A DNA stretch of 64,000 nt, taken from assembly GCA_002269645.1 (NCBI GenBank), contig NIVC01002711.1, forward strand, positions 1 through 64,000, in the 5' to 3' direction. Numbering within the stretch: position 1 is the stretch's first letter; each line of letters starts with the position of its first letter. The notes under the pieces are model-generated. The model was not told where the DNA came from and did no database searches. It saw nothing but the letters and a program-made list of their open reading frames with translations. Of the stretch, positions 1-50,211 are shown one piece after another. The DNA is from Macrostomum lignano (lineage: Eukaryota). Made by a program: the position numbers and the translations under genes.

Positions 1-234
1 TGAATCAGAGGGTGCATAGTTAGTACCTAGTAGTAATGCAAAGACAAAAGTTACTCTTTAGACTTAAGTTTTACCTAAAGAAAAGCTAAATAGACAGGGG
101 CTTGATCAATACTCCTCCACACGGTTTTATAAAAGCTCATTTATTTAACAAATAGCCCAGCACAGATTAATTGCAAACACTATATAATATATACGATCAA
201 AAACCCCGTTAGAACTATTGGTGTAACTAAAAGT

Positions 235-1756
235 TCAGGTGTATTTGACCACGCCAACAAGAGCTGGACGAAGGGTTCTCTCGTGCAGACGTAGCCAACC
301 TTTGTAACTACGGCAACAGTGCCTGGTTGGCAATTCTCGGCAACGGGCACTTCGAATAGGGCCTCGTGCTGATTCGGGTCGAACTTCTCGCCAACGTCGG
401 GTTTTATTGGCTCAAGCTTGTGACGTCGGAACACCTGAAGTGGCCAGGAATGACACGATCTTATAACTAATCAAGGACACGATCTCATAACAAAAGGGCA
501 CGATCTCAAACTAAGGATACGATCTCATAACCAATCAAGGACACGATCTCAAAACCAACTAAGGGCACGATCTCGCAATCAACTAAGGACACAATCTCAC
601 AACCAACTAAGGACACAATCTCACAGCTAACCAAGGACACAATCTCACAACCAACCAAGGACACAATCTCACAACTAACCAAGGACACGATCTCAAAACC
701 AACTAAGGGCACGATCTCGCAATCAACTAAGGACACGATCTCAAAACCAACTATAAGGACACAATCTCACAACCAACTAAGGACACAATCTCACAGCTAA
801 CCAAGGACACAATCTCACAACCAACCAAGGACACAATCTCACAGCTAACCAAGGACACAATCTCACAACCAACCAAGGACACAATCTCACAGCTAACCAA
901 GGACACAATCTCACAACCAACCAAACACAATCTCACAACCAACAAGGACACAATCTCACAACCAACCAAGGACACGATCACAATTGATTAAGGACACAAG
1001 AACAAAGTACTCCACAAAGTCAGCCAGTTATCACCTGTTTGAGCTGGGCCTCAGTCATGCGCAGACCCTCCACCAGAGTGGGATCTGCCTCAGGTGGCGC
1101 GGTCTCGTTCGCCTTAGCCAGAACGTCGGCAACGTCGAGGAGATCCTTGCAGAATGCGGAGATACCAAATATCCGAGCCTCTTCGGCTTGTCTAGTCAAT
1201 CGACGCCTGGTGTTCTCACTTTCGGCTAGAGCGCGAACGTACTTGTCCTGTTCAAAGTTAGATACGATTACGAAACAAACTATTTTTAAAAATGTTCTAA
1301 TACTACTACTCTGCAGAAGTAGAATACACTGCAACAGTGTTTAATATGGCCCTGAAAGGTATTGAAGCAAGAATATTTACACAGACACACGCCCGCACAG
1401 GGACGCACACTCGCACGGCGGCCCTGACTCTCATGAATTTTAATTCAATTCAATAAAAACAATTAAATAAGCTTCACCTGCAGCTGATCCATAGCTGTTT
1501 GTAATTCCGAGCAACGTTTAGCCAGAGCCGCAACCTCCTGCTGCTGCTGCTCCAGCTTCTGGGCGTCATCAGCCTCGCCACCGACTCCAGGAGCGCCAGC
1601 GTCGGCCTCCGAAGAAGTAGACGACATCAATCGATGACTACAAAGTTGAGAGCTTCTAGAAATGCCAGTCAAATTGCTGATAGCAGACAACTGCTGCTGC
1701 CGTTGAACGGCGAGTCCAGAGAGAAATCGGACGGATCGATAGAGACGCTGATACAT
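235..1756 (-). CDS. GRPEL1: Mitochondrial GrpE nucleotide-exchange factor (GRPEL-like), 3 exons: 1756-1478, 1247-1035, 434-235; apparent 1-nt deletion at ~290
   Basis: N-terminus is R/S/L-rich like a mitochondrial presequence (MYQRLYRSVRF...). GrpE motifs: DKYVRALAESENTRRR, FCKDLLDVADVL, GLRMTEAQLKQVF, GEKFDPNQHEALFEV, PGTVAVVTKVGY. After a one-base shift the reading continues LHERTLRPALVGVVK. Donors CAG|GTGAAG (1478) and CAG|GTGATA (1035); acceptors CAG|GAC (1247) and CAG|GTG (434); both introns phase 0. AATAAA at 145-140. Confidence 0.93.
452..1000. repeat. 24-bp minisatellite (AAGGACACAATCTCACAACCAACC) filling GrpE intron 2
   Basis: About 22 degenerate tandem units; source of the spurious CEIVSLV ORFs. 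Confidence 0.95.
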
Positions 1757-1881
1757 TATTAGGCTGGAACAATGGCATGCATGTGTTTGCAAAGCAGTAT
1801 AAATAAGATAATAAATATCTAAACATTTACAAGACTGTTGCGTCCAACAACAACCAGCGCTGGCGGCAAATTACACACAAA

Positions 1882-1972
1882 GCACGCACTCACACACACG
1901 CTCACACAGTGTGTGCAACGACCCTGACTTTCTAATTGTCAGGGATGGACACTCTTTGTGCCCTAAGGGTCA
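1882..1972. repeat. Dispersed repeat fragment, also present at ~20811-20902
   Basis: The block CACACACGCTCACACAG...TGACTTTCTAAT..TC.GG..ATG.ACACTC occurs at both loci with about 70% identity by eye. Confidence 0.55.
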
Positions 1973-2370
1973 GACTCACACATTATTAATGCCTATCCTT
2001 AACTAATTCCTATAGCTTAACCTAACATGTGGCAAACGAAAAATAAAAAAGCTAAACAGAATACGTTTAACTGACCAACAGATCATTCGATAAAAAGCAA
2101 CATTATAGAAAAATGCAAGTTTCACAATGTACTTATAGATTAGTTATCAATTTTAAAATGCAACTATGCCCATGTAAAATATTATAATAGGAAAGTTAAA
2201 ACAAAACCGTTATGAGATGATTTGATTTTTTAACGATTTATATAGAACATAATTGACTTTTTAAAGTACAGCAATGGAGAAACAAATTTACAGAGATTGC
2301 AACGGTAACGCTGAAGTTAAAGTCATTTATCATCATGCATTAATTTAGGTAAGAGTTCTTATTAATTAAA

Positions 2371-2823
2371 CTACTTAGCATTGTCATTCTCAGTAGTATC
2401 ATCATTAGCAGTGGTAGCATTCACACTGTCTTTATCAATGGGATCGTGAATCAGGCGGCTAAGCTTCATCCAGCTGGTAATAGCCTGGGACAATTTGTCC
2501 GTGTGATGGTGCCTGCTGCCCAGACTGCACACAGACATGCTAGAAAAAGTCTCTTCAACGCGAACTTGTCGACCATCGCTTTTGTTGTCGTCAATAACGA
2601 CCTCGGCATCGCTGGGTCTGGGCAGCAGGGTGACCAGATGACCCACGCATCCGTGGGGTAATTCTCGAATAGTCTTACCGCTGATCGGCCGGCCTCTAAA
2701 GGAACAATTAAACAGTGCAGGATCTTGATCGCTGATGCGCAGTGTTGACATTAGATACTCTTCGCGACGCGTGTCGCCGTGATCCGAGGTCACTTGAAAC
2801 GGCATGTAGGCAACTCGCTCCAT
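2371..2823 (-). CDS. RNASEH2C: Ribonuclease H2 subunit C
   Basis: MERVAYMPFQV matches the family (H/Y)(L/M)P motif, FNCSFRGRPISG the SFRGR motif, LPHGCVGHLV the vP.G..G.v motif, and SQAITSWMKLSRLIH the C-terminal W..l...iH motif. ATG at 2823 is preceded by the acceptor TTTTCAG|CC. The upstream part of the listed 200-aa ORF is non-coding read-through. Confidence 0.88.
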   Translation of the reverse strand: MERVAYMPFQVTSDHGDTRREEYLMSTLRISDQDPALFNCSFRGRPISGKTIRELPHGCVGHLVTLLPRPSDAEVVIDDNKSDGRQVRVEETFSSMSVCSLGSRHHHTDKLSQAITSWMKLSRLIHDPIDKDSVNATTANDDTTENDNAK

Positions 2824-2929
2824 GGCTGAAAATTTGATAGAAAAAATAAATAGTGTCATTTGGCATTTGGCTCCGTCTTTGCAAACAACTGCAGAGAGGA
2901 GACATTGGGGAGAATGTGGCACTGTGTTG

Positions 2930-3992
2930 AAGGGGGGCATGAGGAGAAGGGGGCCATGAGGAGAAGGGGGCATTTAGGAGACGGGGCACTGTAAAAAAGG
3001 GGAACTGTGGAGAAGGCGGCTCTAGAGAAGGGGGCACTGTGAAGAGAGGGGCACTGTGAAGAGAGGGGCACTGTGAAGAGAGGGGCACTGTGAAGAGAGG
3101 GGCACTGTGAAGAAAGGGGAACTGTGAAGAGAGGGGCACTGTGAAGAGAGGGGCACTGTGAAGAGAGGGGCACTGTGAAGAAAGGGGAACTGTGAAGAGA
3201 GGGGCACTGTGAAGAGAGGGGAACTGTGAAGAGAGGGACAATGTGAAGAGAGGGGCACTGCGAAGAGAAGAGCACTAGAGAAGGAGGCACTGCGAAGAGA
3301 AGAGCACTAGAGAAGGAGGCACTGCGAAGAGAAGAGCATTGGGGAGACGGGGGCACTGTGAAGAGAAGAGCCCTGGAGAAGGGGGAACTGTGGAGACTGG
3401 GGGGCACTGGAGAAGGGGGAACTGTGGAGACTAGGGGGGGGCACTGGAGAAGGGGAACTGTGGAGACTGGGGGGGGCACTGGAGAAGGGGGAACTGTGGA
3501 GACTGGGGGGGGCACTGGAGAAGGGGAACTGTGGAGACGGGGGGGCACCGGAGAAGGGGGAACTGTGGAGACTGGGGGGGGGCACTGGAGAAGGGGGAAC
3601 TGTGGAGACTGGGGGGGGCACCGGAGAAGGGGGAACTGTGGAGACTGGGGGGGGGCACTGAAGAAGGGGGAACTGTGGAGACTGGGGGGGGCACCGGAGA
3701 AGGGGGAACTGTGGAGACTGGGGGGGCACCGGAGAAGGGGGAACTGTGGAGACTGGGGGGGCACCGGAGAAGGGGGAACTGTGGAGACTGGGGGGCACCG
3801 GAGAAGGGGGAACTGTGGAGACTGGGGGGGGGCACTGGAGAAGGGGGAACTGTGGAGACTGGGGGCACTGAAGAAGGGGGAACTATGGAGACTGGGGGGG
3901 CACTGGAGAAGGGGGAACTGTGGAGACTGGGGGGCACTGGAGAAGGGGGAACTGTGGAGACTGGGGGGCACTGGAGAAGGGGGAACTGTGAT
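2930..3992. repeat. Compound G/purine-rich minisatellite (17-bp TGAAGAGAGGGGCACTG, then ~34-bp GGAGAAGGGGGAACTGTGGAGACTGGGGGGGCACT)
   Basis: Direct tandem units with variable G-run lengths; generates all the P/S-rich and G-rich ORFs between 2708 and 4079. Confidence 0.95.
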
Positions 3993-4519
3993 AAGGGGCA
4001 GTATTAAGTTATACCGAAACCCTAACCCCGAGCACTTCCAATATACTAGCTCGTAAAAAGTTAGTCTAAACTGCTTCAATTAAATAACTCCTGAGAATGT
4101 AACAAAAAACTTTTAGAAAACGCAAGAAAATTTCACCAACGACAGGTAGCAGGCATAAAGTATCACTCGCATCGTATGTCATATGTCGTAATTAGAATTG
4201 AATATATTAAAATAAAACAACTCTTAGATACGACAGTCGATAAGAACGATAAGAATCTTATTAGTCCCTGGTAATAAAGTTTTTTAAGTATAATTCAAAA
4301 AAGTTGTAAAGCACCAATCAGTTTACAAGTGGAGGGGGCATAAGTTAACTGGGCAATCGGATTAAGTTAAGACTTTTTCAGTTTTTTGCGAAGTGTGAAC
4401 CAAGATAAAAAAACGTATTTAGGATTTTATATTTGCGATTAGAAAATTAAATGGTTATATTCGTTATTAGAAAATCGTGTGATTAGAAAATTACGAGCCG
4501 TATCTTCGTGAATAAAAGA

Positions 4520-4637
4520 TAATACTTACTATTAGAAGATGATATTCGTGATTAAATAATTTTCGTGATTAGAACACAATATTCGTGATTAGAAGATGAT
4601 ATTCGTGATTATTGTAGAAGATGATATTCGTGATTAG
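4520..4637. repeat. Short degenerate tandem repeat (GATATTCGTGATTAGAA-like)
   Basis: Five or six copies of TTCGTGATTA with ~20-25-nt spacing. Confidence 0.7.
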
Positions 4638-5132
4638 AAAAGCAGCATATAGAAATTTAAAATAGGAGCCAAGTTAATTACATTTACAATAGCATGATCT
4701 CCGTTCCACGGCACAACGGCAGTTTTGAACGATTATGAGAAATTAGTACAGTGTGATGATGAATCATGCAAAGTACATTACAAAGAGTTGCACTTCGGTT
4801 TTGTTGGAAAAAGGAAATTGAATAACACTTTAATGGTTCTATTTTTGCCCGTTTTTTAATAAATTGAAATACTCGTAGTTTTACTCATGAAATTAAAATC
4901 GTAATTAGACTTGATACGTAGAAAATAATATATTAAAAACCCCGAAGAGTCGACAATTGTATGCTCTGAACTGACTTGGAGTTAATTTGGTTGTGAGCAG
5001 ATATAGGCAGAGAAATGCACAACTTTTAAGTGTTCTCATCAATGCGATTTACAAAACCCTTTTACGCTCGTAAAACAATTTTCATACGAAAATAGGCTTA
5101 CTAAAACGATTCAACATTGTTGATAAGCCAAG

Positions 5133-7199
5133 TCAAGTACTAAAAATATAATCATCAGGTATTTCACCGCTGCAAAGGCTTAATAAGTCCATGTCTCTGC
5201 TGATCGCAACGTAGCCAGGTATATAGCTATCCTTTGGAAAGTACGAGCTCAGCTCATGCGGGGTAGCGAACGTGCCGTCATATTTGAGCACGCTTTCTTG
5301 TTGAATCGGAGTGTAACAAAACTCAGGCACCGAAGTATTGTCAAAATGCTTCTTCGGCTTTGGCACTTCGTGCATTGTTTCACCGTTACGCCATATCGCC
5401 ACGGTAACGGTTGCCATGGTCTCTGAGAACCGTAAGAGAGCAAGCGAGTTCGGGTGGTGCGGATTCGATCTCAGGAGTTCATCGGCTTTGTCTCGCGTTA
5501 CAAATCCATACACGAGTCCGTTAGAGAACATCGCCTTGCACAGATATTTGCTATTTGAGACAAAATTCACGCAACAGAATGCGAATTCCCACAGTGACCG
5601 AGGCTTGATCTCACCACTGCTCACACTTCCAATGATAGGTTTTTTAATAAAATCTTTAAATACTACTCTATCGCCGGCTGATAACAATAGACGGCATTTT
5701 TCACGGAAGTACGCAATACTATCAGCATTGATTTGATGCTTAGTTTTTCGAAGGATGTAATTTTGGATTAGATAAACTACTTCATCAAGCGTCAATGGCT
5801 TGGGAGCTCCGGCAACTATTGGGTAGACTGGACGATCCGAAGCGTACCATTCAATAGCGGCCGTAGCCTCCGAGCGCTGGATGTCGTTCGTAATGAAAAC
5901 GATTGGCTTGGACAAGCACGAGACGACTGTTTGCTCCGGCAACAGTCCACCTGGGTTTGGTTGCGTCAAGAAAAATACGCAAAGTACAAAGGCCTGAGTA
6001 GGCTTTGATCCGCTGCTAGATGACTGCGGCCGATTTTCGAAGCGAAGCGACAGTTTGGCAGTATTTCCATCCCAGTCAATTGAGCTGGAACCCAGTAGAT
6101 TTTTAGTTAACTGCTCCGCATTGCACAAGGCCTCCATCGACAAGTCTTCAAAGTTATGCGCAGTCTTAGCAGACAATACAGCGATGCGCAAATCACCGTC
6201 GCGTTCAACGCCTAGTACGACTTGGAAGAACTTGGCAAAGAGTGGTCGCACGCGGAGCTTTAAGTATTTACCAGCAGTGCTAGACCCGACTCGGACCACT
6301 CGAGCATGTTCCTCAATCACTAGGGAGTTGTGTAGCAATTTCTTCATCGGGTCTGCAAGCTTTTTAAGCATACCACTTTGCTCAAACTGTGAGCAGGTCC
6401 GATAAACAAGCTCCAATGGAGCTTTCTTCTCCAGTTCTAACAGATTCTGATAATCCAAGCAATTGTTGATAGCAGAAACGCGATGAGACAAAGCAAGAAA
6501 TTCATTTACAAGAGTTGACACTCCATCAATCTGCTTTTGAGCTCGGTCTGGCGTGAGGCAAACAGTTTTCAAGTAACCCAACGTTTTTTCTAGCTGTGGG
6601 CCTCTGCCAACCATACAAGGCTCGCACAGCCGAGCAACCTTGCTAGCTACAAGACTTTTCGAATCGCTGGACAGAGCGGATGAGACATGCCTCTTCTTGG
6701 CTGATCGACTTTGCAATTCGTCGCGACTCGAATTTAACAGCTGAGATTCGAACTTGAAAACATTGTTAATCAGTTTTAAAAAATTCCATCTTCCATCCAA
6801 TTCTTGACTATAGTACTTAGAAAACTCCTTCGACAACCGATGATACCGATCTTCAACTTCGTAGAGCCTCACCTCGCTCTCCGCACCGTCTTGATTAATA
6901 CCGGACAGTATGGTACTTTCTTTGTCGAAGTACGCTTTCAATTCGGAATTAAACTTGTCAAAAAAATCGCCTATACGCCAGTCCTGCTGAAAGATGAAGG
7001 CGGCAGTGAAACTATCGCTAAAGTCTAGCTCATTGAGGCTGTTGAGAAATTCCGCAGTCAAGCATTTCTGAAGCACAAAACGAACTTCTCTAGTAAGGAA
7101 GCCATCCGACAGAGTGCAGTAGCCTTCGTTTAAAGCTTTAACAAAATCGTTGTCTCCAAATCTCTCCTGTAACTTTTGATAGTGCACTTTAAGCTCCAT
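5133..7199 (-). CDS. STAT: Divergent, intronless STAT-family transcription factor (688 aa)
   Basis: N-domain-like Y..SDGFLTREVRFVL. DNA-binding-domain strands RVRPLF / IAVLSAKTA / KLSLRFEN. CLSKPIVFITNDIQRSEATAAIEWY resembles STAT SLPVVVISN.SQ..NAWA.ILWY. SH2: SLWEF...NGLVYGFVTRDKADELL...ALLRFSET. Tail Tyr motif PGYVAI resembles STAT5 GYVK. Confidence 0.85.
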   Translation of the reverse strand: MELKVHYQKLQERFGDNDFVKALNEGYCTLSDGFLTREVRFVLQKCLTAEFLNSLNELDFSDSFTAAFIFQQDWRIGDFFDKFNSELKAYFDKESTILSGINQDGAESEVRLYEVEDRYHRLSKEFSKYYSQELDGRWNFLKLINNVFKFESQLLNSSRDELQSRSAKKRHVSSALSSDSKSLVASKVARLCEPCMVGRGPQLEKTLGYLKTVCLTPDRAQKQIDGVSTLVNEFLALSHRVSAINNCLDYQNLLELEKKAPLELVYRTCSQFEQSGMLKKLADPMKKLLHNSLVIEEHARVVRVGSSTAGKYLKLRVRPLFAKFFQVVLGVERDGDLRIAVLSAKTAHNFEDLSMEALCNAEQLTKNLLGSSSIDWDGNTAKLSLRFENRPQSSSSGSKPTQAFVLCVFFLTQPNPGGLLPEQTVVSCLSKPIVFITNDIQRSEATAAIEWYASDRPVYPIVAGAPKPLTLDEVVYLIQNYILRKTKHQINADSIAYFREKCRLLLSAGDRVVFKDFIKKPIIGSVSSGEIKPRSLWEFAFCCVNFVSNSKYLCKAMFSNGLVYGFVTRDKADELLRSNPHHPNSLALLRFSETMATVTVAIWRNGETMHEVPKPKKHFDNTSVPEFCYTPIQQESVLKYDGTFATPHELSSYFPKDSYIPGYVAISRDMDLLSLCSGEIPDDYIFST

Positions 7200-7768
7200 T
7201 TGAATGCATCGTCTGAAAGAATCGATTTGATAAATTTGTACAGTTAGTTACAAAACTATTTAATAATACAAGACAAACTCCAATAAACTAAAAAATGCAG
7301 TTTGCTACAACTAAAACGAGCTATTAGTAAAGTTGTGTAATGCCACTCTGGCCAGTGCAAGCTTGTACATTGTATTAGTAAGTACATGTTGCTACTCAAC
7401 TTATGTACGTAAGGCACGCAGCTCTTGTGCACGTTGCAATCAGATCGCTTCTAAACATACAAATATTGTCTCACCCTACTTGGAGGATGAACACCTTATT
7501 TCTTGAACGCCACAAACACTGCCTGACTCCTGAGTCATTACAAGTTGCACTATTATCTTTTTTACGCTATATCGCGGAAAATATTGATACAAAGAGTAAC
7601 TAAGAAAATCTTTCAAAAAGCAAACACAATCACCTTAACATTTATTTAATAACAAACAACGAAGAAAGTGTTTCAATCGTCTTAAAATGCGCTCCAATAA
7701 TTACATAAATACAACGGATTCAGTAGCTAACAGACAAAAATAAATCAATTCAGTCAATTACACTCAGT

Positions 7769-9377
7769 TCAACGTTTCCCTAACAAACGTTGCTGTCGAA
7801 ATTTCGACATTGGGCGTTGGCTATTGGATTCGGAAATTGATTGATGAGCATTAGCAGCAGTGGCAATATTGGCTTCAACTACTCGATCTTTAACTGCCGG
7901 CGCTTGACTCTGACTTAAGGCTTGTCGTTTCAGCCGCTCAGGAGCACCAATATCGGCTGGACTAGTGTACAGCGGCGCGACTGACGCTTCGCTGCAATCG
8001 CCAGGGGAGTCAGCATCATCACAGTCGGCAGCTTTAGTCTGACCAAGTCTTACTCCAATGTGTCTAAAATTGATTGTCCTCTGACGCATAGTTTCAGCAT
8101 TAGGTGGCTCGCTAGGCCGGTAAGTCAGACTATCATTCTCGTCTGGCTGGGCGAAACTAACCGACTTGCTTGACTTCAACTTACTAATCGGCTTGTCTGT
8201 TAATCCTTGCTCTTCTAGCGCTTCTTGAAGCTCAAGTTCGTCGAGACGGGCCCAAATCTTAGCATCATCAACTGCACCGGTTGCTTCGCAATCTTTCACT
8301 CGCTGTTCTCGCTCTTCAATTTTCTGTTGTCGAACTGCCTGACGATGCTTGATAGCCCAATCGGCTTCAGATTCATTTGTCCACTGTTCTCGAATATCGC
8401 CGCCAGCTTCTGTGGCGCCTAGATCTTCTAGTAGGCGACAGTTCTCCATCGCGCTAGATTGGCGAGCCTGCGTTTTGTGTTGTTAATTGTTTACGCTTGA
8501 GTTAACGTATCTGAGTTTTCACAGCATTCTAGTTAAGGGTCAGAATAGTATGCATGTATGGCGGGGTCCATGAGAATTGTCCGCCAAGATTTGTCATTTT
8601 GCCATGAGGTAGATTTTTTCTGCATTGCCCCCCCCCCCCAACGCTTAGTGTCTTAATAAAAGATTTACCCCATCAAAACGTTTCGATGGTAACTGCATAT
8701 TAAATGCTTGTATGTTATTTATTTATATTTACATACATGGGTTTATCTGTGAGCTACATCTGTCTTCTGGAAATTCTCGGGCTCCCTGTGCGGCATGATC
8801 AGTTTTCAGAATCACCCAGCCACTTTTAAATGGCACACATGTAATTTAAGGTGAAGTGAGAGTTAGGAGCTAGGGCTCGGCCAATCGGGACAAGTCAGGT
8901 GCAAGTGAGGTGCCATCGTTGCCCAATATCAGCCCAAATCTACCATTTTCAAGAGGAATGACTCAGTCAGATCAGATGACCACGAATTTAATATTAGCAG
9001 TAACTTGTGCTTGCTATTTTAAACCCTAAATTACAAAAGAAACAAAGAGATGAACGCACCAGAAACAAATTCCTGCTAGCTCTCAATCGATCGCATCTTA
9101 GTTGAACAATTTTCAATGCATTCACTGCAGAAGTCTCAGCATAATAGTCACAGCCAAGTCGAATAGTAACTTCGCAACAGTGCAGCACTGTGCCTTTAGC
9201 TAAGCAACCAGGCGACAATGTTAATAATTGTTCAGAGCGAAATCTGCTTGAAACTTCAGCAAGACGCTTCTCCAGTGCAGAATATTTCTCCAGCTGACTG
9301 TCTATTTCTACTAATTTAGCTTCAGCTTCAGCGGCAGCTGTGCGCTGTATCTCTAGCAGAGAATGTGCTTCAGTCAT
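7769..9377 (-). CDS. URI1: Unconventional prefoldin RPB5 interactor (URI1/Bud27-like), 2 exons: 9377-9060 and 8467-7769
   Basis: Alpha-prefoldin domain KYSALEKRL...GTVLHCCEVTIRLGCDYYAETSAVNALKIV; GDIRE; RPB5-binding IWARLDELELQE; C-terminal URI box RPMSKFRQQRL. Donor CTG|GTGCGT and acceptor CAG|GCT are both phase 0. AATAAA at 7647-7642. Confidence 0.9.
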
Positions 9378-9821
9378 TTTTATAGCGAGTGGCTTTTTAG
9401 TTTTTGAATCTCTGCAGGCATAACTGATATTGTCTGTAATATCTGATTGGTTTCTGGAAATACTCGTAGAATGATTAAAATACAATTACTATTGATTGTG
9501 ATCTTAGATCTGGTCAAATACAGAATAAGTCAATTAAGCAACAATCAATTTCTAAACACAATCTTTCTGAACATAGGCATATTGGACCAAAAATCTGTCT
9601 TCAGCATAAAAATAAACCATTGTGTAAATAGAATATTCATTTATAAGAATGTATAGTTTAGTTCCACAAGCATTATTATGGTGTTTGCACAGTTTTTATT
9701 GTCTAGTGGGTTAGGGTTTATCATGAGCTATTAGGTTAGGTATTAGGTATTATATATTAGCATGTTTTAGAATCCAAAACAAAGCAAAGTTTTAACCTAA
9801 GATCAAGTTGAGTAAGAATAA

Positions 9822-9968
9822 CCACTGTTAATGAAAATCTTAACTTACATTAAGAGCAAAAGCATTAGCATTAAAACAAAGAATCTTAACTTGTTTACTC
9901 TTAATTTCATTTAAGTTGACTAAAAGTTACTGATAATCATTAATAAGCATTAATACATTAATCTTAAC
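9822..9968. repeat. AT-rich repeat arm, inverted copy of 12272-12418
   Basis: The reverse complement aligns with 12272-12418 (ATTAATGCTTATTAATGATTATCA...TTTAATGCTAATGCTTTTGC...AGATTTTCATTAA), about 75-80% identical by eye. Confidence 0.7.
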
Positions 9969-11124
9969 ATAGAAAGTATGGAAATTTTGCCCTTCTTTTC
10001 AAAGCAAACTTCATAATAGCAAACTACATTTAACATCTTTTTAGCCAAAACAGAGAGGTCATCCAAGCAATTTACAAGCTAAAAAGAAACAAATTAAAAG
10101 TAAATGTGTATAAAAATATTACTAAGAAAAGATAAAGTAAAATAACTAACTTATTTATTTGAAACTAGAAAGCTAATTAATTACTAATAAAATATGAACA
10201 GGAAATTTCATTCAATAGCACTAGCAAGTGCAGTAGAAAGTTACAAAATATTAGAAAAGAAAATGAATCAAAGTGATGCTTATGCGCAATGCTTATGTAT
10301 AATTTATGTTATAACCTATAAATGTAAATATATAATTTAAAAACATAAAAATGTAAATATAATGAAACATTTGAAAGACATTTACTGCTATTTATACTTA
10401 TTAACTACTTGACTTAACTCAATATTTAAGAATCAAAAGCTACAATAAAAATTTCTCAACTTCAGTTTAACTTTAAAAAAATGATATAAAAAATAAAGTT
10501 GCTTATAATATGCCTACTTTTTATAGTATATTCTTTTAAAACAAAAGTTTTACCTACACTAATTATGGTTAAAAATTGTTATTCTTTGCTTTATTTTTAT
10601 AACAATAAAAATAATATATAAAATAAGCCAGATTCCAAAAAGTAATGTAAAATAAAGTAAAGTAAAGAATGTAAAATAAAGGAATAACGTCTAAAAAGTC
10701 AATGATAAACTTTTTGCTACTTTAAAATTAACAATAAATAAAAATAGTATAACTTATTGCTAAAAACGTACACTTTTCATCATTCTTTCTATAGGTATAA
10801 TTTAAGTTTGTTTAAAATGAAGATATTTATAATATTTTAAAGACTTTTCATACAAAAGCCTTTCTTAGGAAACTCAACTGACAACTTGTGAAAACTAAAT
10901 GACTTTTTAGGAAGAATTTTTGGCTTACATTTTAGGGCTTTTTTGTTTTTTGGTGTACACTGGCCTACATTTACTTGATATAGGATTCTTGTTCCTATGT
11001 ATACTAGTACTACACAATCTGGACCCTGGGTGCCAAGCTATACTATGGATTGTAAAATTAATTATATTTATAAATAAGATTTATTACGCCTAAGCTTAAT
11101 ATTTATTAACCCTATCATGCTTGG

Positions 11125-15174: not shown

Positions 15175-16697
15175 TTGGTGTTCTGGAGAGCACCCCTGTC
15201 TCTTGGTGTGCGCTCCTGTCTCTTGTTGTGCGCTCCTGTCTCTTGGTGGGCGCTCCTGTCTCTTGTTGTGCGCTCCTGTCTCTTGGTGGGCGCCCCTGTC
15301 TCTTGGTGGGCGCCCCTGTCTATTCTTGTGCGCTCCTGCCTCTTGGTGGGCGCCCCTGTCTCTTGGTGGGCGCCCCTGTCTCTTGATGGGCGCCCCTGTC
15401 TCTTTGTGTGCGCTCCTGTCTCTTGTTGGGCGCCCCTGTCTCTTGGTGGGCGCTCCTGTCTCTTGCTGGGCGCTCCTGTCTCTTGTTGGGCGCCCCTGTC
15501 TCTTGGTGGGCGCTCCTGTCTCTTGTTGTGCGCTCCTGTCTCTTGGTGGGCGCCCCTGTCTCTTGGTGGGCGCCCCTGTCTATTCTTGTGCGCTCCTGCC
15601 TCTTGGTGGGCGCCCCTGTCTCTTGGTGGGCGCCCCTGTCTCTTGATGGGCGCCCCTGTCTCTTAGTGAGCGCTCCTGTCTCTTGTTGGGCGCCCCTGTC
15701 TCTTGGTGGGCGCTCCTGTCTCTTGTTGTGCGCTCCTGTCTCTTGTTGGGCGCCCTGTCTCTTGGTGGGCGCCCCTGTCTCTTGTTGTGCGCTCCTGTCT
15801 CTTGTTGGGCGCCCCTGTCTCTTGGTGGGCGCTCCTGTCTCTTGGTGGGCGCTCCTGTCTCTTGTTGGGCGCCCCTGTCTCTTGGTGGGCGCTCCTGTCT
15901 CTTGCTGGGCGCTCCTGTCTCTTGGTGTGCGCTGCTGTCTCTTGTTGGGCGCCCCTGTCTCTTGGTGGGCGCTCCTGTCTCTTGGTGTGCGCTGCTGTCT
16001 CTTGGTGGGCGCTCCTGTCTCTTGTTGTGCGCTCCTGTCTCTTGGTGGGCGCCCCTGTCTATTCTTGTGCGCTCCTGCCTCTTGGTGGGCGCCCCTGTCT
16101 CTTGGTGGGCGCCCCTGTCTCTTGATGGGCGCCCCTGTCTCTTTGTGTGCGCTCCTGTCTCTTGTTGGGCGCCCCTGTCTCTTGGTGGGCGCTCCTGTCT
16201 CTTGTTGGGCGCCCCTGTCTCTTGGTGGGCGCTCCTGTCTCTTGGTGTGCGCTGCTGTCTCTTGTTGGGCGCCCCTGTCTCTTGGTGAGCGCCCCAGTCT
16301 CTTGGTGTGCGCTGCTGTCTCTTGTTGGGCGCCCCTGTCTCTTGGTTGGCGCTCCTGTCTCTTGGTGGTCGCTCCTGTCTCTTGGTGTGCGCTCCTGTCT
16401 CTTGGTGGGCGCTGCTGTCTCTTGTTGGGCGCCCCTGTCTCTTGTTGGGCGCCCCTGTCTCTTGGTGTGCGCTCCTGTCTCTTGGTGGGCGCCCCTGTCT
16501 CTTGGTGGGCGCCCCTGTCTATTCTTGTGCGCTCCTGCCTCTTGGTGGGCGCCCCTGTCTCTTGGTGGGCGCCCCTGTCTCTTGATGGGCGCCCCTGTCT
16601 CTTTGTGTGCGCTCCTGTCTCTTGTTGGGCGCCCCTGTCTCTTGGTGGGCGCTCCTGTCTCTTGCTGGGCGCTCCTGTCTCTTGGTGGGCGCCCCTG
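15175..16697. repeat. 20-bp GC-rich minisatellite (CTGTCTCTTGGTGGGCGCCC), ~75 copies
   Basis: Regular 20-bp period with recurring variant blocks; source of the ORFs between 15175 and 16729. Confidence 0.97.
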
Positions 16698-17713
16698 TGA
16701 TAACAATATCTAAAAGTACAAAGTAACAAAGTCGTATTTATAGCGCCTTATACCCGTAGAGTAGCAGAAGCAGGTGATGTTCTACCTGCTGGCCATGTAC
16801 TTTTGAATCAGTGACAATGCAGAAAGCAGATATTTACAAAAGGCTAGATACGCTTTTACAAATCTGCATTGTTTTAAAGAAAAGCTTTTTGTCTAAAAAA
16901 CTTTTTTAAGCTTTAAAAATTTTTTAACAGCGCATTGTTCGAACGCAACGATTCAATGGGATGGCCGGGAGACACTAAATAGTGTGGTCGAGGGGTAGTA
17001 GGGTGAGGAGTAGAGATATAGTATCAATAGGTAGAAGCAGTAGGGAAAATAGAATGCGAAGTAAAAAGAGTATGACTAAAATGTGTAAATAGAGAAAGAA
17101 GCATGTTACGAATATTTCTATAGAAATGTGTACCAATTTATTACATGTTGGAATTCAAAACTACTAATGTATTAATATTTTGGCCTTGCTCAGTACTGCC
17201 GCATAGCTATACTATATTTACCACAATGAATAGTCACATGCTTTTCTGACGCTAATTAAAACTAAAATCATTGGTGCGTTACAGAGTTCGTGTATACACA
17301 TGCACATGTAGAAGTCAACTGCTAATGAGCCTGCTGAAATATGCAAATGAGCCCCTCGGCCTTACTACGTATGACAAAACAACTGACAGGTTTACATTCG
17401 AGGTTTGACATCGCGAACTCTGATGGGTACCCACTTCCCCTCGAGGGCATTGTGAGGCTCCAGTCGCGATTTCCAATTGAATTGGACAGGCTCTGTATGG
17501 GACATTATGCAGTCTCAATGATGATCCTGTCGGACGAATCTGATTGGCTAGTTGGTTCGGTCAGCCAATCAGATTGCGGATTTCAGAATTCTATAGTGGG
17601 GTCTACCTATCGGGCCGCCAGTTTTATAAAAAAAGAATACCTGAAATGCAGAACTCTTTTTGGGGGACCAACTTCGAACCAAATTGAACCTTCGAAAACA
17701 ACTGACAAAGAAA

Positions 17714-36935
<19,222 letters not shown>

Positions 36936-44057: not shown

Positions 44058-44828
44058 TTAAAACGGAAAAACGCATTCGCACAGACCGGCCGACACTTCA
44101 TTCATTTCCATGCGTCCGTCACTTAGATTCGGATTGGCTGACCATCGCAAAATCACATTCTCGTCATTTCCCGTGTTGCTTGGCTCCGATTGACTCCAAA
44201 GAGTTCTGGCCACCTCAAGATTGCAGGCAATCCAATGCCAGCCTTCGAGCGGCTCTGCACTGTCCTCAGTCTGGAAACCGCCGAGCCAGAACGACTTGCC
44301 AAAACTGTACTTCGCATGAAGCATCTCAATATGGTGCATCTCGGTAGCGTCCACCACATCTGCCATGATGACCGGGCCGCTCTCCGACTCGCACTTTTCT
44401 CTGCTTTGCTTCCAACTTCCTGAGTCGTTGAACAGCTTGTACTTCACTCCGCACAGGTCGTCTCCGTAGCCAGACGGACACAGCGCGCCCGCCTCGAGTC
44501 CCGGCTGCTGCTTCACAAACACCCGGCCTCTCCTGGAGCAGCCGCAGTTCCTCACCGACTTGCTGCACTTGTCGAACACGAACAGCTGGCACGGACCGTC
44601 AGCCAGGCTGAACGCCTGACAGCGCCGGTCTCTGCTGCATAATGCGGAGCACTTCAGGGTAGAACTCGCATCTGGCTTGATGACAACAAACTCACTTCTT
44701 AAGCACAGTAGTCCAAGTATTCGATGGTAAGCATTGGACGTTCTTGACAGACTGCTGCAGGTATGTAGCAACAAGGTGGTTAAAATAAACAAATGACCAA
44801 TTATATATGCGGCTTTCATGACAGGCAT
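44058..44828 (-). CDS. Secreted PAN/apple-like + C-type lectin domain protein, paralog A (256 aa, intronless)
   Basis: Signal peptide; PAN-type CSALCSRDRRCQAF; CTLD with SWKQSREKC, FWLGG, GWHW, W..SEPSN and terminal LCEC. Confidence 0.88.
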   Translation of the reverse strand: MPVMKAAYIIGHLFILTTLLLHTCSSLSRTSNAYHRILGLLCLRSEFVVIKPDASSTLKCSALCSRDRRCQAFSLADGPCQLFVFDKCSKSVRNCGCSRRGRVFVKQQPGLEAGALCPSGYGDDLCGVKYKLFNDSGSWKQSREKCESESGPVIMADVVDATEMHHIEMLHAKYSFGKSFWLGGFQTEDSAEPLEGWHWIACNLEVARTLWSQSEPSNTGNDENVILRWSANPNLSDGRMEMNEVSAGLCECVFPF

Positions 44829-49437: not shown

Positions 49438-50211
49438 TCAGTTGAATGGCGACGCGCACTCGCACAGAACTTTGGACAGATCAGAGGCCTCGTTTATATC
49501 GACCAGCTTTGGGAGACTGTGATACCGCGCAACAGCATTCTCGTTGCCATCTCCCACATTGTTTGGCTCGTCATGACCCCACAAGCTGCTGCTCAAAGGG
49601 ATGTTGCAGGCGACCCAGTGCCAGCCTCCTGACGGCTCTAGACTTCCTACTTTCTGGTGGCCTCCGAGAAAAACCGATTGACCAGAACTGCGCGACTTGT
49701 AAATAATTTCCACGTGGTCCATCTCGGTGGCGTCAACCACATCGGCCATGATCACCAGGCCGCTCTCCGACTCGCATTTCTCTTTGCTCTTTTTCCAGTT
49801 GCCCGTCTCACTATGCAGCTTGTACTTCACTCCGCACAGGTCGTCTCCGTAGCCAGACGGACACAGCGCCCCAGCCTCGAGTCCCGGCTGCTGCTTCACA
49901 AACACCCGGCCTCTCCTGGAGCAGCCGCAGTTCCTTACCGACTTGCTGCACTTGTCGAACACGAACAGCTGGCACGGACCGTCAGCCAGGCTGAACGCCT
50001 GACAGCGCCGGTCGCTGCTGCACCAGAAGGCGCAGCCGGCCATTGAAACAACGTCGGAGAGGCTACGAACGAACTCTTTGTTGATGCAGAGGCTGCCGTT
50101 GATGCTTGAATACGAAGCCACGTCAGCTGCCTGCACGACTTTTAGCATGAAGAGAAAAACGGAAAACAGTTGGCTAAGCGTCTTTGTTGGCATTTGATGA
50201 TTATTTATCAA
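49438..50211 (-). CDS. Secreted PAN/apple-like + C-type lectin domain protein, paralog B (257 aa, intronless)
   Basis: Signal peptide; GCAFWCSSDRRCQAF; CTLD with NWKKSKEKC, VFLGG, GWHW, W.HDEPNN (EPN motif) and terminal LCEC. The start could be the second Met (MPTKT). Confidence 0.88.
   Translation of the reverse strand: MINNHQMPTKTLSQLFSVFLFMLKVVQAADVASYSSINGSLCINKEFVRSLSDVVSMAGCAFWCSSDRRCQAFSLADGPCQLFVFDKCSKSVRNCGCSRRGRVFVKQQPGLEAGALCPSGYGDDLCGVKYKLHSETGNWKKSKEKCESESGLVIMADVVDATEMDHVEIIYKSRSSGQSVFLGGHQKVGSLEPSGGWHWVACNIPLSSSLWGHDEPNNVGDGNENAVARYHSLPKLVDINEASDLSKVLCECASPFN

What the first reader, a model, noticed from the sequence alone, without database searches (positions are those of the whole stretch)
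235..9413. Candidate SL-trans-spliced operon: URI1 - STAT - RNASEH2C - GrpE
Seen: four unrelated genes lie head-to-tail on the minus strand, with stop-to-next-acceptor gaps of ~550, ~2300 (about half minisatellite) and ~600 bp. Each start codon sits just downstream of a YAG acceptor for which I found no obvious upstream exon: URI1 TTATGCCTGCAG|34 nt|ATG (9413-9412), STAT GATTCTTTCAG|13 nt|ATG (7214-7213), RNASEH2C TTTTTTCTATCAAATTTTCAG|CC|ATG (2827-2826), GrpE ATTGTTCCAG|7 nt|ATG (1765-1764). AATAAA follows URI1 and GrpE. Established: acceptors just before the ATG in tightly packed co-oriented housekeeping genes are the signature of SL-resolved operons in nematodes, flatworms and tunicates. 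Inference: a polycistron coupling an RNA polymerase assembly co-chaperone, ribonucleotide repair and mitochondrial import with a STAT. The lectin A start, which lacks such an acceptor, is an internal control.
Basis: partly seen in the sequence, partly recalled or inferred. Interest (0 to 1): 0.75.

Follow-up and report, generated by a model that had tools for sequence, protein, structure and literature searches.

The report
Trans-spliced flatworm gene cluster, probable operon
Four same-strand housekeeping-type genes of the flatworm Macrostomum lignano each begin right after a spliced-leader acceptor site and fit the published definition of an operon in this species, where a third of genes are trans-spliced, so the finding is largely right but ordinary.

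Summary
The window is the end of contig NIVC01002711.1 of the Macrostomum lignano Mlig_3_7 assembly. This species has one 35-nt spliced leader (SL). Published figures are about 30% of genes trans-spliced and about 15% in operons. All four acceptors match the published trans-splice motif [TC]TNCAG, far more often than chance (Fisher p about 3e-4). Two indirect lines support real SL use. First, deposited 5'-partial gene models start within 0-2 nt of such junctions. Second, a third genomic copy carries SL-like bases (…CATG| instead of …CAG|) at three junctions, best explained by the documented Pilon polishing with RNA-seq reads. Corrections:
- URI1 more likely uses upstream acceptors, with exon starts at 9453 and 9433, not 9411.
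- The "STAT" is a divergent STAT-like protein with no Pfam hit above threshold but significant homology to STAT5B.
- The window's GrpE copy carries a 1-nt frameshift, probably an assembly error.
- A fifth co-oriented gene (GRP94-like) follows in the sister copies.

Co-transcription itself is not shown. The gaps (about 410, 800 and 455 nt from predicted poly(A) signals, repeats removed) pass the 1-kb criterion for M. lignano. They are well above its roughly 100-bp mode. Kind: already known.

The parts
7769..9459 (-). URI1-like gene (unconventional prefoldin RPB5 interactor). Three candidate SL acceptors: TTCCAG 9459-9454, TTACAG 9439-9434, CTGCAG 9417-9412. ATG at 9377. Exon 1 runs to 9060, intron 9059-8468, exon 2 8467-7769 (stop 7771-7769).
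   Evidence: Sequence. Pfam Prefoldin 5.7e-8. UniProt A0A1I8J863, 338 aa, is named 'Unconventional prefoldin RPB5 interactor', and PAA55758.1 lies on this contig. Deposited 5'-partial CDS models start at window 9431 (exon start 9433) in L001/L002 and at the 9453-equivalent in L005.
7641..7646 (-). AATAAA poly(A) signal of URI1, overlapped by ATTAAA at 7650. It lies about 120 nt after the stop and about 410 nt before the STAT-like acceptor.
5133..7218 (-). Divergent STAT-like gene without introns. Acceptor TTTCAG 7218-7213, exon start 7212, ATG 7199, stop 5135-5133, 688 aa.
   Evidence: ORF. No Pfam hit for the full length; SH2 hit of 15 bits, below the cut-off, for the C-terminus. HMMER against 1.84 billion proteins gives hits with STAT_int, STAT_bind, STAT_linker and SH2 domains at E 3e-7 to 5e-4. 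BLASTP to Mactra STAT5B gives 5e-13 over residues 429-597, including PIVFIT...IEWY and GFVTRDKADELL...LLRFSE. 12 synonymous versus 4 non-synonymous differences to copy L005.
2929..3998 (.). C-rich minisatellites (17-nt and 34-nt units) that fill about half of the STAT-to-RNASEH2C gap. A further 20-nt array lies at 4505-4639. Copy number differs between the genomic copies.
   Evidence: TRF; indel differences
2371..2831 (-). RNASEH2C gene without introns. Acceptor TTTCAG 2831-2826, exon start 2825, ATG 2823, stop 2373-2371, 150 aa.
   Evidence: Pfam RNase_H2_suC 1.3e-5, above the cut-off. The L001 model starts at the ATG, 2 nt after the junction. No AATAAA or ATTAAA downstream.
235..1769 (-). 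GrpE (mitochondrial GRPEL1-type) gene. Acceptor TTCCAG 1769-1764, exon 1 1763-1478 (ATG 1756), exon 2 1247-1035, exon 3 434-235. A 24-nt minisatellite at 452-979 sits in intron 2. A 1-nt deletion at about 292 shifts the frame in this copy.
   Evidence: Pfam GrpE 7e-38. The sister copy gives an intact 230-aa product. The deposited models PAA93446.1 and PAA49834.1 begin 'LIMYQ', which is 1 nt after the junction. Differences between copies are listed.
140..145 (-). AATAAA poly(A) signal of GrpE. The contig, and so the window, ends about 140 nt further on.
9460..10950 (-). AT-rich (24% GC) gene-free region upstream of URI1 with several TATA-like motifs. This is the inferred location of the cluster's promoter and the URI1 outron. 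No gene is called for at least 7.7 kb upstream.
   Evidence: inference only

Best explanation
This is a cluster of four co-oriented Macrostomum lignano genes: URI1, a divergent STAT-like gene, RNASEH2C and mitochondrial GrpE. A GRP94-like gene follows just beyond the contig end.

Each mRNA is matured by trans-splicing of the species' single 35-nt spliced leader (…TTGCATG) onto a [TC]TNCAG acceptor 2-76 nt upstream of its start codon. This step is strongly supported by indirect evidence.

The cluster meets the published in-silico definition of an M. lignano operon. Most likely, RNA polymerase II starts in the AT-rich region upstream of URI1 and reads through all four genes. Each upstream mRNA is cleaved and polyadenylated at its own signal, and each downstream cistron receives its cap through SL addition. 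This co-transcription step is inferred, not shown.

The SL's terminal AUG is out of frame with all four ORFs in this copy, so translation starts at the genes' own AUGs.
For: - Organism and system. The contig belongs to GCA_002269645.1, Mlig_3_7, and proteins are named M. lignano. SL sequence, motif, 30% trans-spliced, 15% in operons and the 1-kb repeat-adjusted criterion come from PMC8629364.
- Motif. All four acceptors, plus two further URI1 sites and the GRP94-like gene, match [TC]TNCAG. Proximity to the ATG is non-random. The TATA-type lectin control lacks the motif.
- Gene-model 5' ends. The deposited CDSs are flagged 'partial' and begin 0-2 nt after a junction for URI1 (3 of 3 copies), GrpE (2 of 2) and STAT (1 of 3). 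The RNASEH2C model in L001 starts at an ATG 2 nt after the junction. The annotation pipeline cut transcripts at mapped SL-read peaks (PMC5730564).
- SL footprints. In copy L005 the bases at -4 to -2 of three junctions are changed to the SL's bases: six substitutions in 12 positions, all toward …CATG| (nominal p about 1e-9). The assembly was Pilon-polished with STAR-mapped RNA-seq.
- Operon criteria. The genes share a strand, no ORF or called gene lies between them, and gaps after repeat subtraction are under about 1.1 kb from the stop and about 410, 800 and 455 nt from predicted poly(A) signals.
- Chimeric model. UniProt A0A1I8J972 joins RNASEH2C 1-133 to GrpE 4-end. Such chimeras are treated as signs of polycistronic precursors in PMC12582326.
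- Conservation. The order and spacing of all five genes are kept in three genomic copies.
Against: - No RNA read was seen here. Evidence for SL addition is indirect, and for GrpE it rests on model ends only.
- The three genomic copies share multi-mapping reads, so they are not independent.
- Co-transcription is untested.
- The gaps are 4-8 times the ~100-bp mode of M. lignano operon spacers and exceed the 300-bp threshold used for other flatworms. The second gap is 2.3 kb in raw length.
- Each gap holds at least one GT[AG]AG and some TATA-like strings, so internal promoters or cis exons cannot be excluded from sequence alone.
- The chimeric model keeps the reading frame through a GT..AG 'intron', which is typical of ab initio prediction.
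- About 60% of trans-spliced genes in this species are monocistronic.
Confidence: 0.45

Rival explanations
1. All four genes are SL-trans-spliced but each is transcribed from its own promoter inside the preceding gap, as a monocistronic gene with an outron. Under this reading the head-to-tail arrangement is simple gene density, not an operon.
For: - About 60% of trans-spliced M. lignano genes are not in operons.
- Gaps of 410-800 nt lie well above the ~100-bp operon mode and above the 300-bp flatworm threshold.
- The next gene downstream (GRP94-like) has the same kind of acceptor and also carries stress-promoter elements, TGACGTGG and CCAAT-N9-CCACA, 150-220 nt upstream. So an acceptor before the ATG does not imply dependence on an upstream promoter.
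Against: - The gaps pass the species-specific 1-kb repeat-adjusted criterion.
- No recognisable promoter element (CCAAT, TATA at a suitable distance) is present in gap 1, and only weak TATA-like strings occur in gaps 2 and 3.
- A chimeric RNASEH2C+GrpE model exists.
Confidence: 0.25
2. The cluster is a partial operon. Two short units, URI1+STAT-like and RNASEH2C+GrpE, are separated by an independent promoter in the 2.3-kb repeat-rich gap. Some other subset of the genes could equally be co-transcribed.
For: - 75% of M. lignano operons have two genes and fewer than 7% have four or more.
- Gap 2 is the longest: 2307 nt, or 1102 nt from the stop after repeat subtraction, which is borderline for the criterion.
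- The only chimeric model links RNASEH2C and GrpE alone.
Against: Measured from the predicted ATTAAA at 4860/4834, gap 2 is about 800 nt after repeat removal and still passes. The published analysis argues that repeats inflate operon spacers.
Confidence: 0.22
3. The acceptors belong to ordinary cis-spliced introns in the 5' UTRs, with short non-coding first exons hidden in the gaps.
For: Each gap contains at least one GT[AG]AG (7474; 5101 and 4529; 1979, 1905 and 1893). In other flatworms many SL acceptors are shared with cis-splicing.
Against: - The deposited models have no upstream exon and stop at the junctions.
- The bases written into copy L005 at three different genes are the SL's own last bases, CATG. 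Three unrelated cis exons would not share these.
Confidence: 0.04
4. The AG-containing motifs upstream of the ATGs are chance occurrences with no role in splicing.
For: AG dinucleotides are common, and URI1 has three candidate sites within 80 nt.
Against: Fisher combined p = 3e-4 for the specific 6-mer at the observed distances. Gene-model ends coincide with the junctions, and SL footprints lie at them.
Confidence: 0.01

Closest known systems
Macrostomum lignano SL trans-spliced genes and operons (Wudarski et al. 2017, PMC5730564; Ustyantsev & Berezikov 2021, PMC8629364)
   Same: Same organism and assembly. One 35-nt SL ending in ATG. The [TC]TNCAG acceptor sits at the mRNA 5' end. The genes are conserved housekeeping types, which are enriched among trans-spliced genes. 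They are co-oriented neighbours with repeat-inflated spacers under 1 kb after repeat subtraction.
   Different: The spacers (about 410-800 nt) fall in the tail of the published distribution, not at its ~100-bp mode. Four-gene operons are a small minority (fewer than 7%). Co-transcription of this particular locus was not verified here and is not described in any paper I could search.
Caenorhabditis elegans SL2-type operons
   Same: Co-oriented, functionally unrelated housekeeping genes. Downstream cistrons are capped by trans-splicing coupled to upstream 3'-end formation.
   Different: C. elegans uses a dedicated SL2 family and spacers of about 100 nt. M. lignano has a single SL, and the spacers here are several-fold longer and contain minisatellites.
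Parasitic flatworm operons, such as the Schistosoma/trematode cytochrome b-c1 subunit 7 and enolase pair (PMC12582326)
   Same: Same phylum. The SL ends in AUG. Operons are resolved by the same SL that serves monocistronic genes. Chimeric gene models arise from polycistronic precursors.
   Different: The median intercistronic distance is about 99 bp and a 300-bp threshold is used, which this locus would fail. No orthologous operon is reported there (no GrpE or prefoldin mention).
Canonical metazoan STAT proteins, such as STAT5B
   Same: Homology covers the end of the DNA-binding domain, the linker and the start of the SH2 domain. It includes the PxVxIT…WY and GF(I/V)x(K/R)xxAxxLL…LRFS(E/D) motifs. 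A GYV tyrosine motif lies about 80 residues after the SH2 arginine. The predicted helical, then beta, then helical, then alpha/beta order is compatible (low confidence).
   Different: No Pfam STAT or SH2 domain reaches its gathering score. No N-terminal STAT_int match was found. The nearest relatives are M. lignano paralogues only. DNA binding and phosphorylation are untested.

Membership tests
SL trans-spliced gene of M. lignano | The organism possesses an SL RNA and the trans-splicing machinery | not testable with these tools
   Taken from the literature (PMC8629364). No SL RNA gene lies in the window and Rfam gives no hit. The organism's identity was established.
SL trans-spliced gene of M. 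lignano | A [TC]TNCAG acceptor directly at the 5' end of the mature mRNA, with no upstream cis exon | tested here: met
   The motif is present at all four genes and closer to the ATG than chance allows. Deposited 5'-partial models begin 0-2 nt after a junction for URI1, GrpE and STAT (L005), and the RNASEH2C model (L001) is consistent.
SL trans-spliced gene of M. lignano | The SL sequence is found on the mRNA 5' end | tested here: inconclusive
   No RNA reads were available. Indirect evidence: copy L005 carries the SL-terminal bases (…CATG| or …TG|) in place of the acceptor AG at the URI1, STAT and RNASEH2C junctions, and the assembly was polished with RNA-seq. GrpE shows no such footprint.
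M. lignano operon as defined by Ustyantsev & Berezikov 2021 | Immediately adjacent genes on the same strand, with no opposite-strand gene between them | tested here: met
   Gene calls on three copies. Only repeat-derived ORFs occur in the gaps.
M. lignano operon as defined by Ustyantsev & Berezikov 2021 | Repeat-adjusted intergenic distance below 1000 bp | tested here: met
   Gaps 1 and 3 are 556 and 607 nt even when measured from the stop codon. Gap 2 is 2307 nt, less 1205 nt of TRF arrays, giving 1102 nt from the stop and about 800 nt from the predicted ATTAAA. Poly(A) sites are predicted, not measured, so gap 2 is borderline.
M. lignano operon as defined by Ustyantsev & Berezikov 2021 | The downstream genes are SL trans-spliced | tested here: inconclusive
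   Strong indirect support, as in the rows above. No direct reads.
Operon in the strict sense (polycistronic precursor) | A single primary transcript spans the cistrons | not testable with these tools
   The only hint is the chimeric RNASEH2C+GrpE model A0A1I8J972, which may be an ab initio artefact. No M. lignano transcript contigs are in the searchable collections.
Flatworm operon by the 300-bp criterion (PMC12582326) | Intergenic distance of 300 bp or less | tested here: not met
   All gaps are at least about 410 nt. That paper calls its own threshold conservative.
STAT transcription factor | STAT DNA-binding, linker and SH2 domains recognised by curated profiles | tested here: not met
   Pfam gives no family for the full length and an SH2 hit of 15 bits against a cut-off of 21 for the C-terminus. 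No PDB sequence hit. The AlphaFold model has pLDDT 33 and is unusable.
STAT transcription factor | Significant sequence homology to bona fide STATs over the linker and SH2 region | tested here: met
   phmmer against 1.84 billion proteins gives E 3e-7, 8e-6 and 5e-4 to proteins that carry STAT_int, STAT_bind, STAT_linker and SH2 domains. One of them is named STAT5B, from Mactra antiquata. Pairwise BLASTP gives 5e-13.
URI1 (unconventional prefoldin RPB5 interactor) | An N-terminal prefoldin alpha-type domain, and orthology to URI1 | tested here: inconclusive
   The Prefoldin domain is met. The URI1 name comes only from the UniProt entry A0A1I8J863 in the same 90% cluster. Orthology was not tested independently, and no PDB hit was found.
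RNase H2 subunit C / GrpE | Pfam family above its gathering score | tested here: met
   RNase_H2_suC scores 25.9 bits against 20.8. GrpE scores 130 bits against 25.8. The best GrpE relatives are animal mitochondrial GRPEL1.

The most novel reading that the evidence does not exclude
The four genes, perhaps with the GRP94-like fifth, really are one polycistron. Its make-up would then be functional: a lineage-specific, divergent STAT-like transcription factor would be expressed in fixed proportion with proteostasis and genome-maintenance genes (a Pol II assembly co-chaperone, RNase H2 and the mitochondrial Hsp70 nucleotide exchanger). That would tie a signalling factor to housekeeping output in a regenerating flatworm.
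Probability: 0.1. Interest if true: 0.4.

Novelty: already known. Interest (0 to 1): 0.15.

Why it matters
It adds little beyond confirmation. SL trans-splicing and operons were mapped genome-wide in M. lignano in 2017-2021, and the deposited gene models at this locus already end at the trans-splice junctions.

Three points have practical value:
- A sequence-only reader can recognise SL acceptors correctly, but cannot distinguish an operon from trans-spliced neighbours.
- Anyone designing promoters or transgenes for these genes in M. lignano should expect the regulatory region to lie upstream of URI1, not in the gaps, if the operon reading holds.
- The public reference appears to contain RNA-seq polishing artefacts that overwrite acceptor AGs with SL bases. 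This matters for splice-site analyses on this assembly.

Tried and rejected
- Rfam scan of the whole window: no hit, so no SL RNA or snRNA gene.
- Search for the 35-nt SL in the window with up to 3 mismatches: none.
- Search for the SL 3' 13-mer with up to 2 mismatches: 10 matches against 3.9 expected. The one I inspected (17135) is not at a gene start, and 2334 lies in the RNASEH2C 3' UTR. I treat this as AT-rich background and did not pursue it.
- Transcript contigs carrying the SL. Exact-protein look-ups returned only genome contigs. Homologue searches showed no M. lignano or other Macrostomum transcriptome-derived proteins. Direct RNA evidence was therefore unobtainable.
- Synteny outside the species. 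The Fasciola hepatica GrpE spans 17 kb and has no called neighbour within 10 kb, which is uninformative. Other Macrostomum genomes are not in the collections.
- STAT identity by structure. The single-sequence AlphaFold model had pLDDT 33, so I ran no fold search. phmmer against PDB sequences gave nothing.
- URI1 against PDB sequences: only spurious hits at E 0.7.
- Gene-level annotation in the literature. The locus tags Mlig017145, Mlig020272, Mlig023729 and Mlig033556 appear in no searchable main text. They are also absent from the held supplements of PMC5816591. PMC8629364 has no held supplements, and those of PMC5730564 are small.
- Noncoding conservation between copies as a proxy for constraint. 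Divergence is too patchy (0.35% to 6%) to interpret.
- BLAST of the gap sequences against the rest of the window, to find dispersed repeats: one 90-bp hit only. No further repeat subtraction is justified.

Full report
**Origin of the sequence**

An exact-protein look-up of the 690-aa model of the "STAT" ORF placed it on two contigs of NCBI assembly GCA_002269645.1. BLAST showed that the window is identical to NIVC01002711.1 positions 1-64000. Window position 1 is therefore a contig end. Papers link GCA_002269645 and NIVC00000000 to the Macrostomum lignano Mlig_3_7 assembly. Homologues are named "[Macrostomum lignano]" by NCBI and UniProt.

Two further genomic copies of the locus were retrieved:
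- L001, on the 1.0-Mb contig NIVC01000027.1, is 99.25% identical over window 10811-1.
- L005, on NIVC01003778.1, is about 98% identical.

M. lignano is a recent polyploid with a duplicated large chromosome (PMC8629364), so such copies are expected.

**Check of the observation**

- URI1-like: ATG 9377, one intron 9059-8468, stop 7769, 338 aa, Pfam Prefoldin.
- STAT-like: intronless ORF 7199-5133.
- RNASEH2C: 2823-2371.
- GrpE: ATG 1756, three exons.

The AGs sit at 9413-9412, 7214-7213, 2827-2826 and 1765-1764, at 34, 13, 2 and 7 nt from the ATGs. Stop-to-acceptor gaps are 556, 2307 and 607 nt. Tandem arrays cover 52% of the middle gap. AATAAA follows URI1 (7646) and GrpE (145). Lectin A (ATG 44828) has no acceptor within 120 nt and has a TATA-like TATTTATAAG instead.

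All four acceptors match [TC]TNCAG, the motif published for M. lignano trans-splice sites. That 6-mer occurs once per 387 nt in the window. The observed proximities have probabilities of 0.087, 0.036, 0.008 and 0.021 (Fisher p = 3e-4).

**Biology of the species**

Published work establishes the following:
- M. lignano has one SL, CGGTCTCTTACTGCGAAGACTCAATTTATTGCATG.
- About 30% of genes, and 45% of conserved genes, are trans-spliced.
- About 7% of assembled transcripts are multi-gene precursors.
- About 15% of genes are assigned to operons. The definition is adjacent co-oriented trans-spliced genes whose spacer, after subtracting repeats, is under 1 kb. The spacer distribution peaks near 100 bp.
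- 75% of operons have two genes and 18% have three.

**Indirect evidence that the SL is used here**

No RNA data could be reached with the tools. Two proxies exist.

The first proxy is the deposited NCBI gene models. They are flagged "partial", and their CDSs run to the 5' end of the transcript model. The annotation pipeline (TBONE) cut transcript models at peaks of mapped SL-containing reads. The CDS starts imply these mRNA 5' ends:
- GrpE: exactly at TTCCAG| in L001 and L005.
- URI1: exactly at TTACAG| (window exon start 9433) in the window copy and in L001, although the two are in different frames.
- URI1: exactly at the TTCCAG|-equivalent (window 9453) in L005.
- STAT-like: exactly at the junction in L005, and 5-7 nt inside it in the other two copies.
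- RNASEH2C: at the ATG, 2 nt after the junction, in L001, and 9-11 nt inside it in the other two copies.

The per-model probability of landing 0-2 nt after the motif by chance is about 0.008. The copies share multi-mapping reads, so they are not independent.

The second proxy is in copy L005, where three junctions have lost their AG:
- URI1: …tttccag|AAACC became …attcatg|AAACC.
- STAT-like: …tttcag|ACGATG became …tttctg|ACGATG.
- RNASEH2C: …ttttcag|CCATGG became …tttcatg|CCATGG.

These are six substitutions in the 12 positions from -4 to -1. Every one changes to the base the SL has at that position (SL end …gcatg|). The nominal p is about 1e-9. The coding sequences of L005 are intact and evolve mostly synonymously (STAT-like 12 synonymous, 4 non-synonymous).

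The assembly paper states that contigs were polished with Pilon using RNA-seq mapped by STAR. The simplest explanation is that SL-bearing RNA-seq reads overhanging these junctions were written into the reference. That is a footprint of trans-spliced mRNAs at exactly these sites.

I rate SL trans-splicing of URI1, STAT-like and RNASEH2C at about 0.9, and of GrpE at about 0.85.

**Operon or trans-spliced neighbours**

This is the unproven step.

In favour:
- The genes share a strand and nothing lies between them.
- The arrangement is kept in all three copies.
- Spacers pass the species criterion: about 410 nt (from AATAAA 7646), about 800 nt (from ATTAAA 4860/4834, minus 1205 nt of arrays) and about 455 nt (RNASEH2C has no canonical signal; estimated from TATAAA 2242).
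- A UniProt model from the older ML2 annotation (A0A1I8J972, 360 aa) fuses RNASEH2C residues 1-133 to GrpE from residue 4, through a GT..AG junction at window 2424..1748. A recent flatworm study treats such chimeras as by-products of polycistronic precursors, even across several kb.

Against:
- The spacers are 4-8 times the ~100-bp mode and fail the 300-bp rule used for parasitic flatworms.
- Most trans-spliced genes are monocistronic.
- Four-gene operons are rare.
- The in-frame chimera looks like an ab initio product.
- The fifth gene, described in the next section, shows that an identical acceptor can coexist with what looks like its own promoter.

My estimates are about 0.45 for a four-gene polycistron, about 0.22 for partial operons and about 0.25 for independent trans-spliced genes. 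Cis-spliced 5' exons (about 0.04) and chance (about 0.01) are effectively excluded.

**The fifth gene**

In L001 and L005, GrpE is followed after 1.4 kb by a 786-aa HSP90-family gene with these features:
- a signal-peptide-like N-terminus and a C-terminal KTEL, so it is GRP94/HSP90B1-like;
- a CTACAG acceptor 14 nt before its ATG;
- 150-220 nt upstream, a perfect TGACGTGG (on the opposite strand) and a CCAAT-N9-CCACA.

From my own knowledge, those two elements correspond to the mammalian UPRE and near-ERSE consensus motifs. The spacer exceeds 1 kb, so by the published rule this gene is outside the operon.

**Gene identities**

GrpE and RNASEH2C pass the Pfam cut-offs. The best GrpE relatives are animal mitochondrial GRPEL1. 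URI1 has a Prefoldin domain, and its cluster mate is named "Unconventional prefoldin RPB5 interactor" by UniProt.

The "STAT" is the weak point:
- no Pfam family for the full length;
- an SH2 hit below threshold (15 bits against 21);
- no homologue in the word-indexed 5.8-billion search except itself;
- no PDB sequence match;
- an unusable AlphaFold model.

An exhaustive phmmer search nevertheless found four relatives: M. lignano paralogues (Mlig018849, and UniProt "SH2 domain-containing protein"), a metagenomic protein, and Mactra antiquata STAT5B. Three of the four carry STAT_int, STAT_bind, STAT_linker or SH2 matches.

Pairwise BLASTP to STAT5B gives 5e-13 over residues 429-597. This stretch covers the end of the DNA-binding domain, the linker and the start of SH2, with PIVFIT…IEWY and GFVTRDKADELL…LLRFSE. 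It is a divergent, lineage-expanded STAT-like protein under purifying selection. Its function as a STAT is inferred.

**Mechanism**

From established knowledge of SL operons: Pol II initiates upstream of the first gene; cleavage and polyadenylation of each upstream cistron leaves an uncapped downstream RNA; that RNA is capped by trans-splicing of the SL at the next acceptor.

Here the SL's terminal AUG is out of frame with all four ORFs in the window copy. It opens short upstream ORFs of 5-36 codons. Translation of the annotated proteins must therefore use leaky scanning or reinitiation, as is usual for flatworm SLs.

**Verdict**

The kind of system is already known in this species, and the public annotation evidently already encodes these trans-splice sites. 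Interest is low.

Noticed in passing
L005 1456-1462, 3700-3702 and 8955-8960 (equivalent to window 9459-9454, 7215-7213 and 2831-2826): In the third genomic copy, the acceptor AG at three trans-splice junctions is replaced by the last bases of the spliced leader (…CATG| or …TG|). This is probably an artefact of polishing the public assembly with RNA-seq reads. It would corrupt splice-site analyses on Mlig_3_7 and may affect many trans-spliced genes. A real RNA-templated conversion is unlikely but not excluded.
   Followed up: partly
window 1-1031, especially 292: Compared with the sister copy, this contig end has a run of single-base deletions at 1031, 1008, 944, 292, 233, 203, 129, 119, 100, 71 and 13. 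The one at 292 shifts the frame of GrpE's last exon, and the one at 1031 alters the intron-2 donor (GTGAGT to GTGATA). No GrpE gene is called on this contig. This is probably poorly polished contig-end sequence, not a pseudogene.
   Followed up: partly
L001 18150-18447 and L005 12700-18229 (beyond window position 1): A fifth co-oriented gene lies 1.4 kb after GrpE. It is GRP94/HSP90B1-like, 786 aa, with a signal-peptide-like start and a KTEL end. It has a CTACAG acceptor 14 nt before the ATG. Upstream it carries UPRE-like TGACGTGG and ERSE-like CCAAT-N9-CCACA elements that are identical in both copies.
   Followed up: partly
window 2424 to 1748, minus strand: UniProt A0A1I8J972 (older ML2 annotation, 360 aa) is a chimera of RNASEH2C residues 1-133 and GrpE from residue 4. 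They are joined by an in-frame GT..AG junction across the intergenic gap. Because of it, the 90% protein cluster mixes RNASEH2C and GrpE sequences.
   Followed up: partly
window 5133-7199; paralogues P0126/P0130 (Mlig018849) and P0127/P0132: M. lignano has a small family of very divergent STAT-like, SH2-containing proteins that escape the Pfam thresholds. Outside the species, only weak links to a mollusc STAT5B and one metagenomic protein were found.
   Followed up: partly
window 9406 / L001 7803: A single extra A in the URI1 5' leader of the sister copy puts the SL's AUG (junction at 9433) in frame with the URI1 ORF there. In the window copy it is out of frame. In the window copy, all four genes get short out-of-frame upstream ORFs from the SL AUG.
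   Followed up: partly
window 9600-10811 versus 1-9600: Divergence between the window and L001 changes abruptly. There are about 2% substitutions upstream of about 9600 and only three substitutions in the 9.6 kb downstream, across genes, introns and gaps alike. Further upstream (beyond 10811) identity falls to 88-95%, with large indels. This suggests a recent conversion or duplication boundary, or an assembly mosaic, near the start of the cluster.
   Followed up: no
window 452-979, 2929-3998, 4505-4639, 15193-16700 and many others: The window is unusually rich in minisatellites with units of 17, 20, 24, 34 and about 20-40 nt. These generate long spurious ORFs on both strands. Copy numbers differ between the genomic copies.
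   Followed up: no
window-wide, for example 2334-2346, 17135-17147 and 34882-34894: 13-mers within 2 mismatches of the SL 3' end (AATTTATTGCATG) are more frequent than in shuffles: 10 against 3.9 expected, with 0 of 100 shuffles reaching 10. The two I inspected are not at gene starts. This may only reflect AT-rich word bias.
   Followed up: partly
window 44058-44828 and 49438-50211, minus strand: Two paralogous secreted C-type-lectin-like genes. Lectin A has a TATA-like element about 45 nt before its ATG and no acceptor. The upstream region of lectin B has four [TC]TNCAG motifs within 100 nt of its first in-frame start.
   Followed up: no
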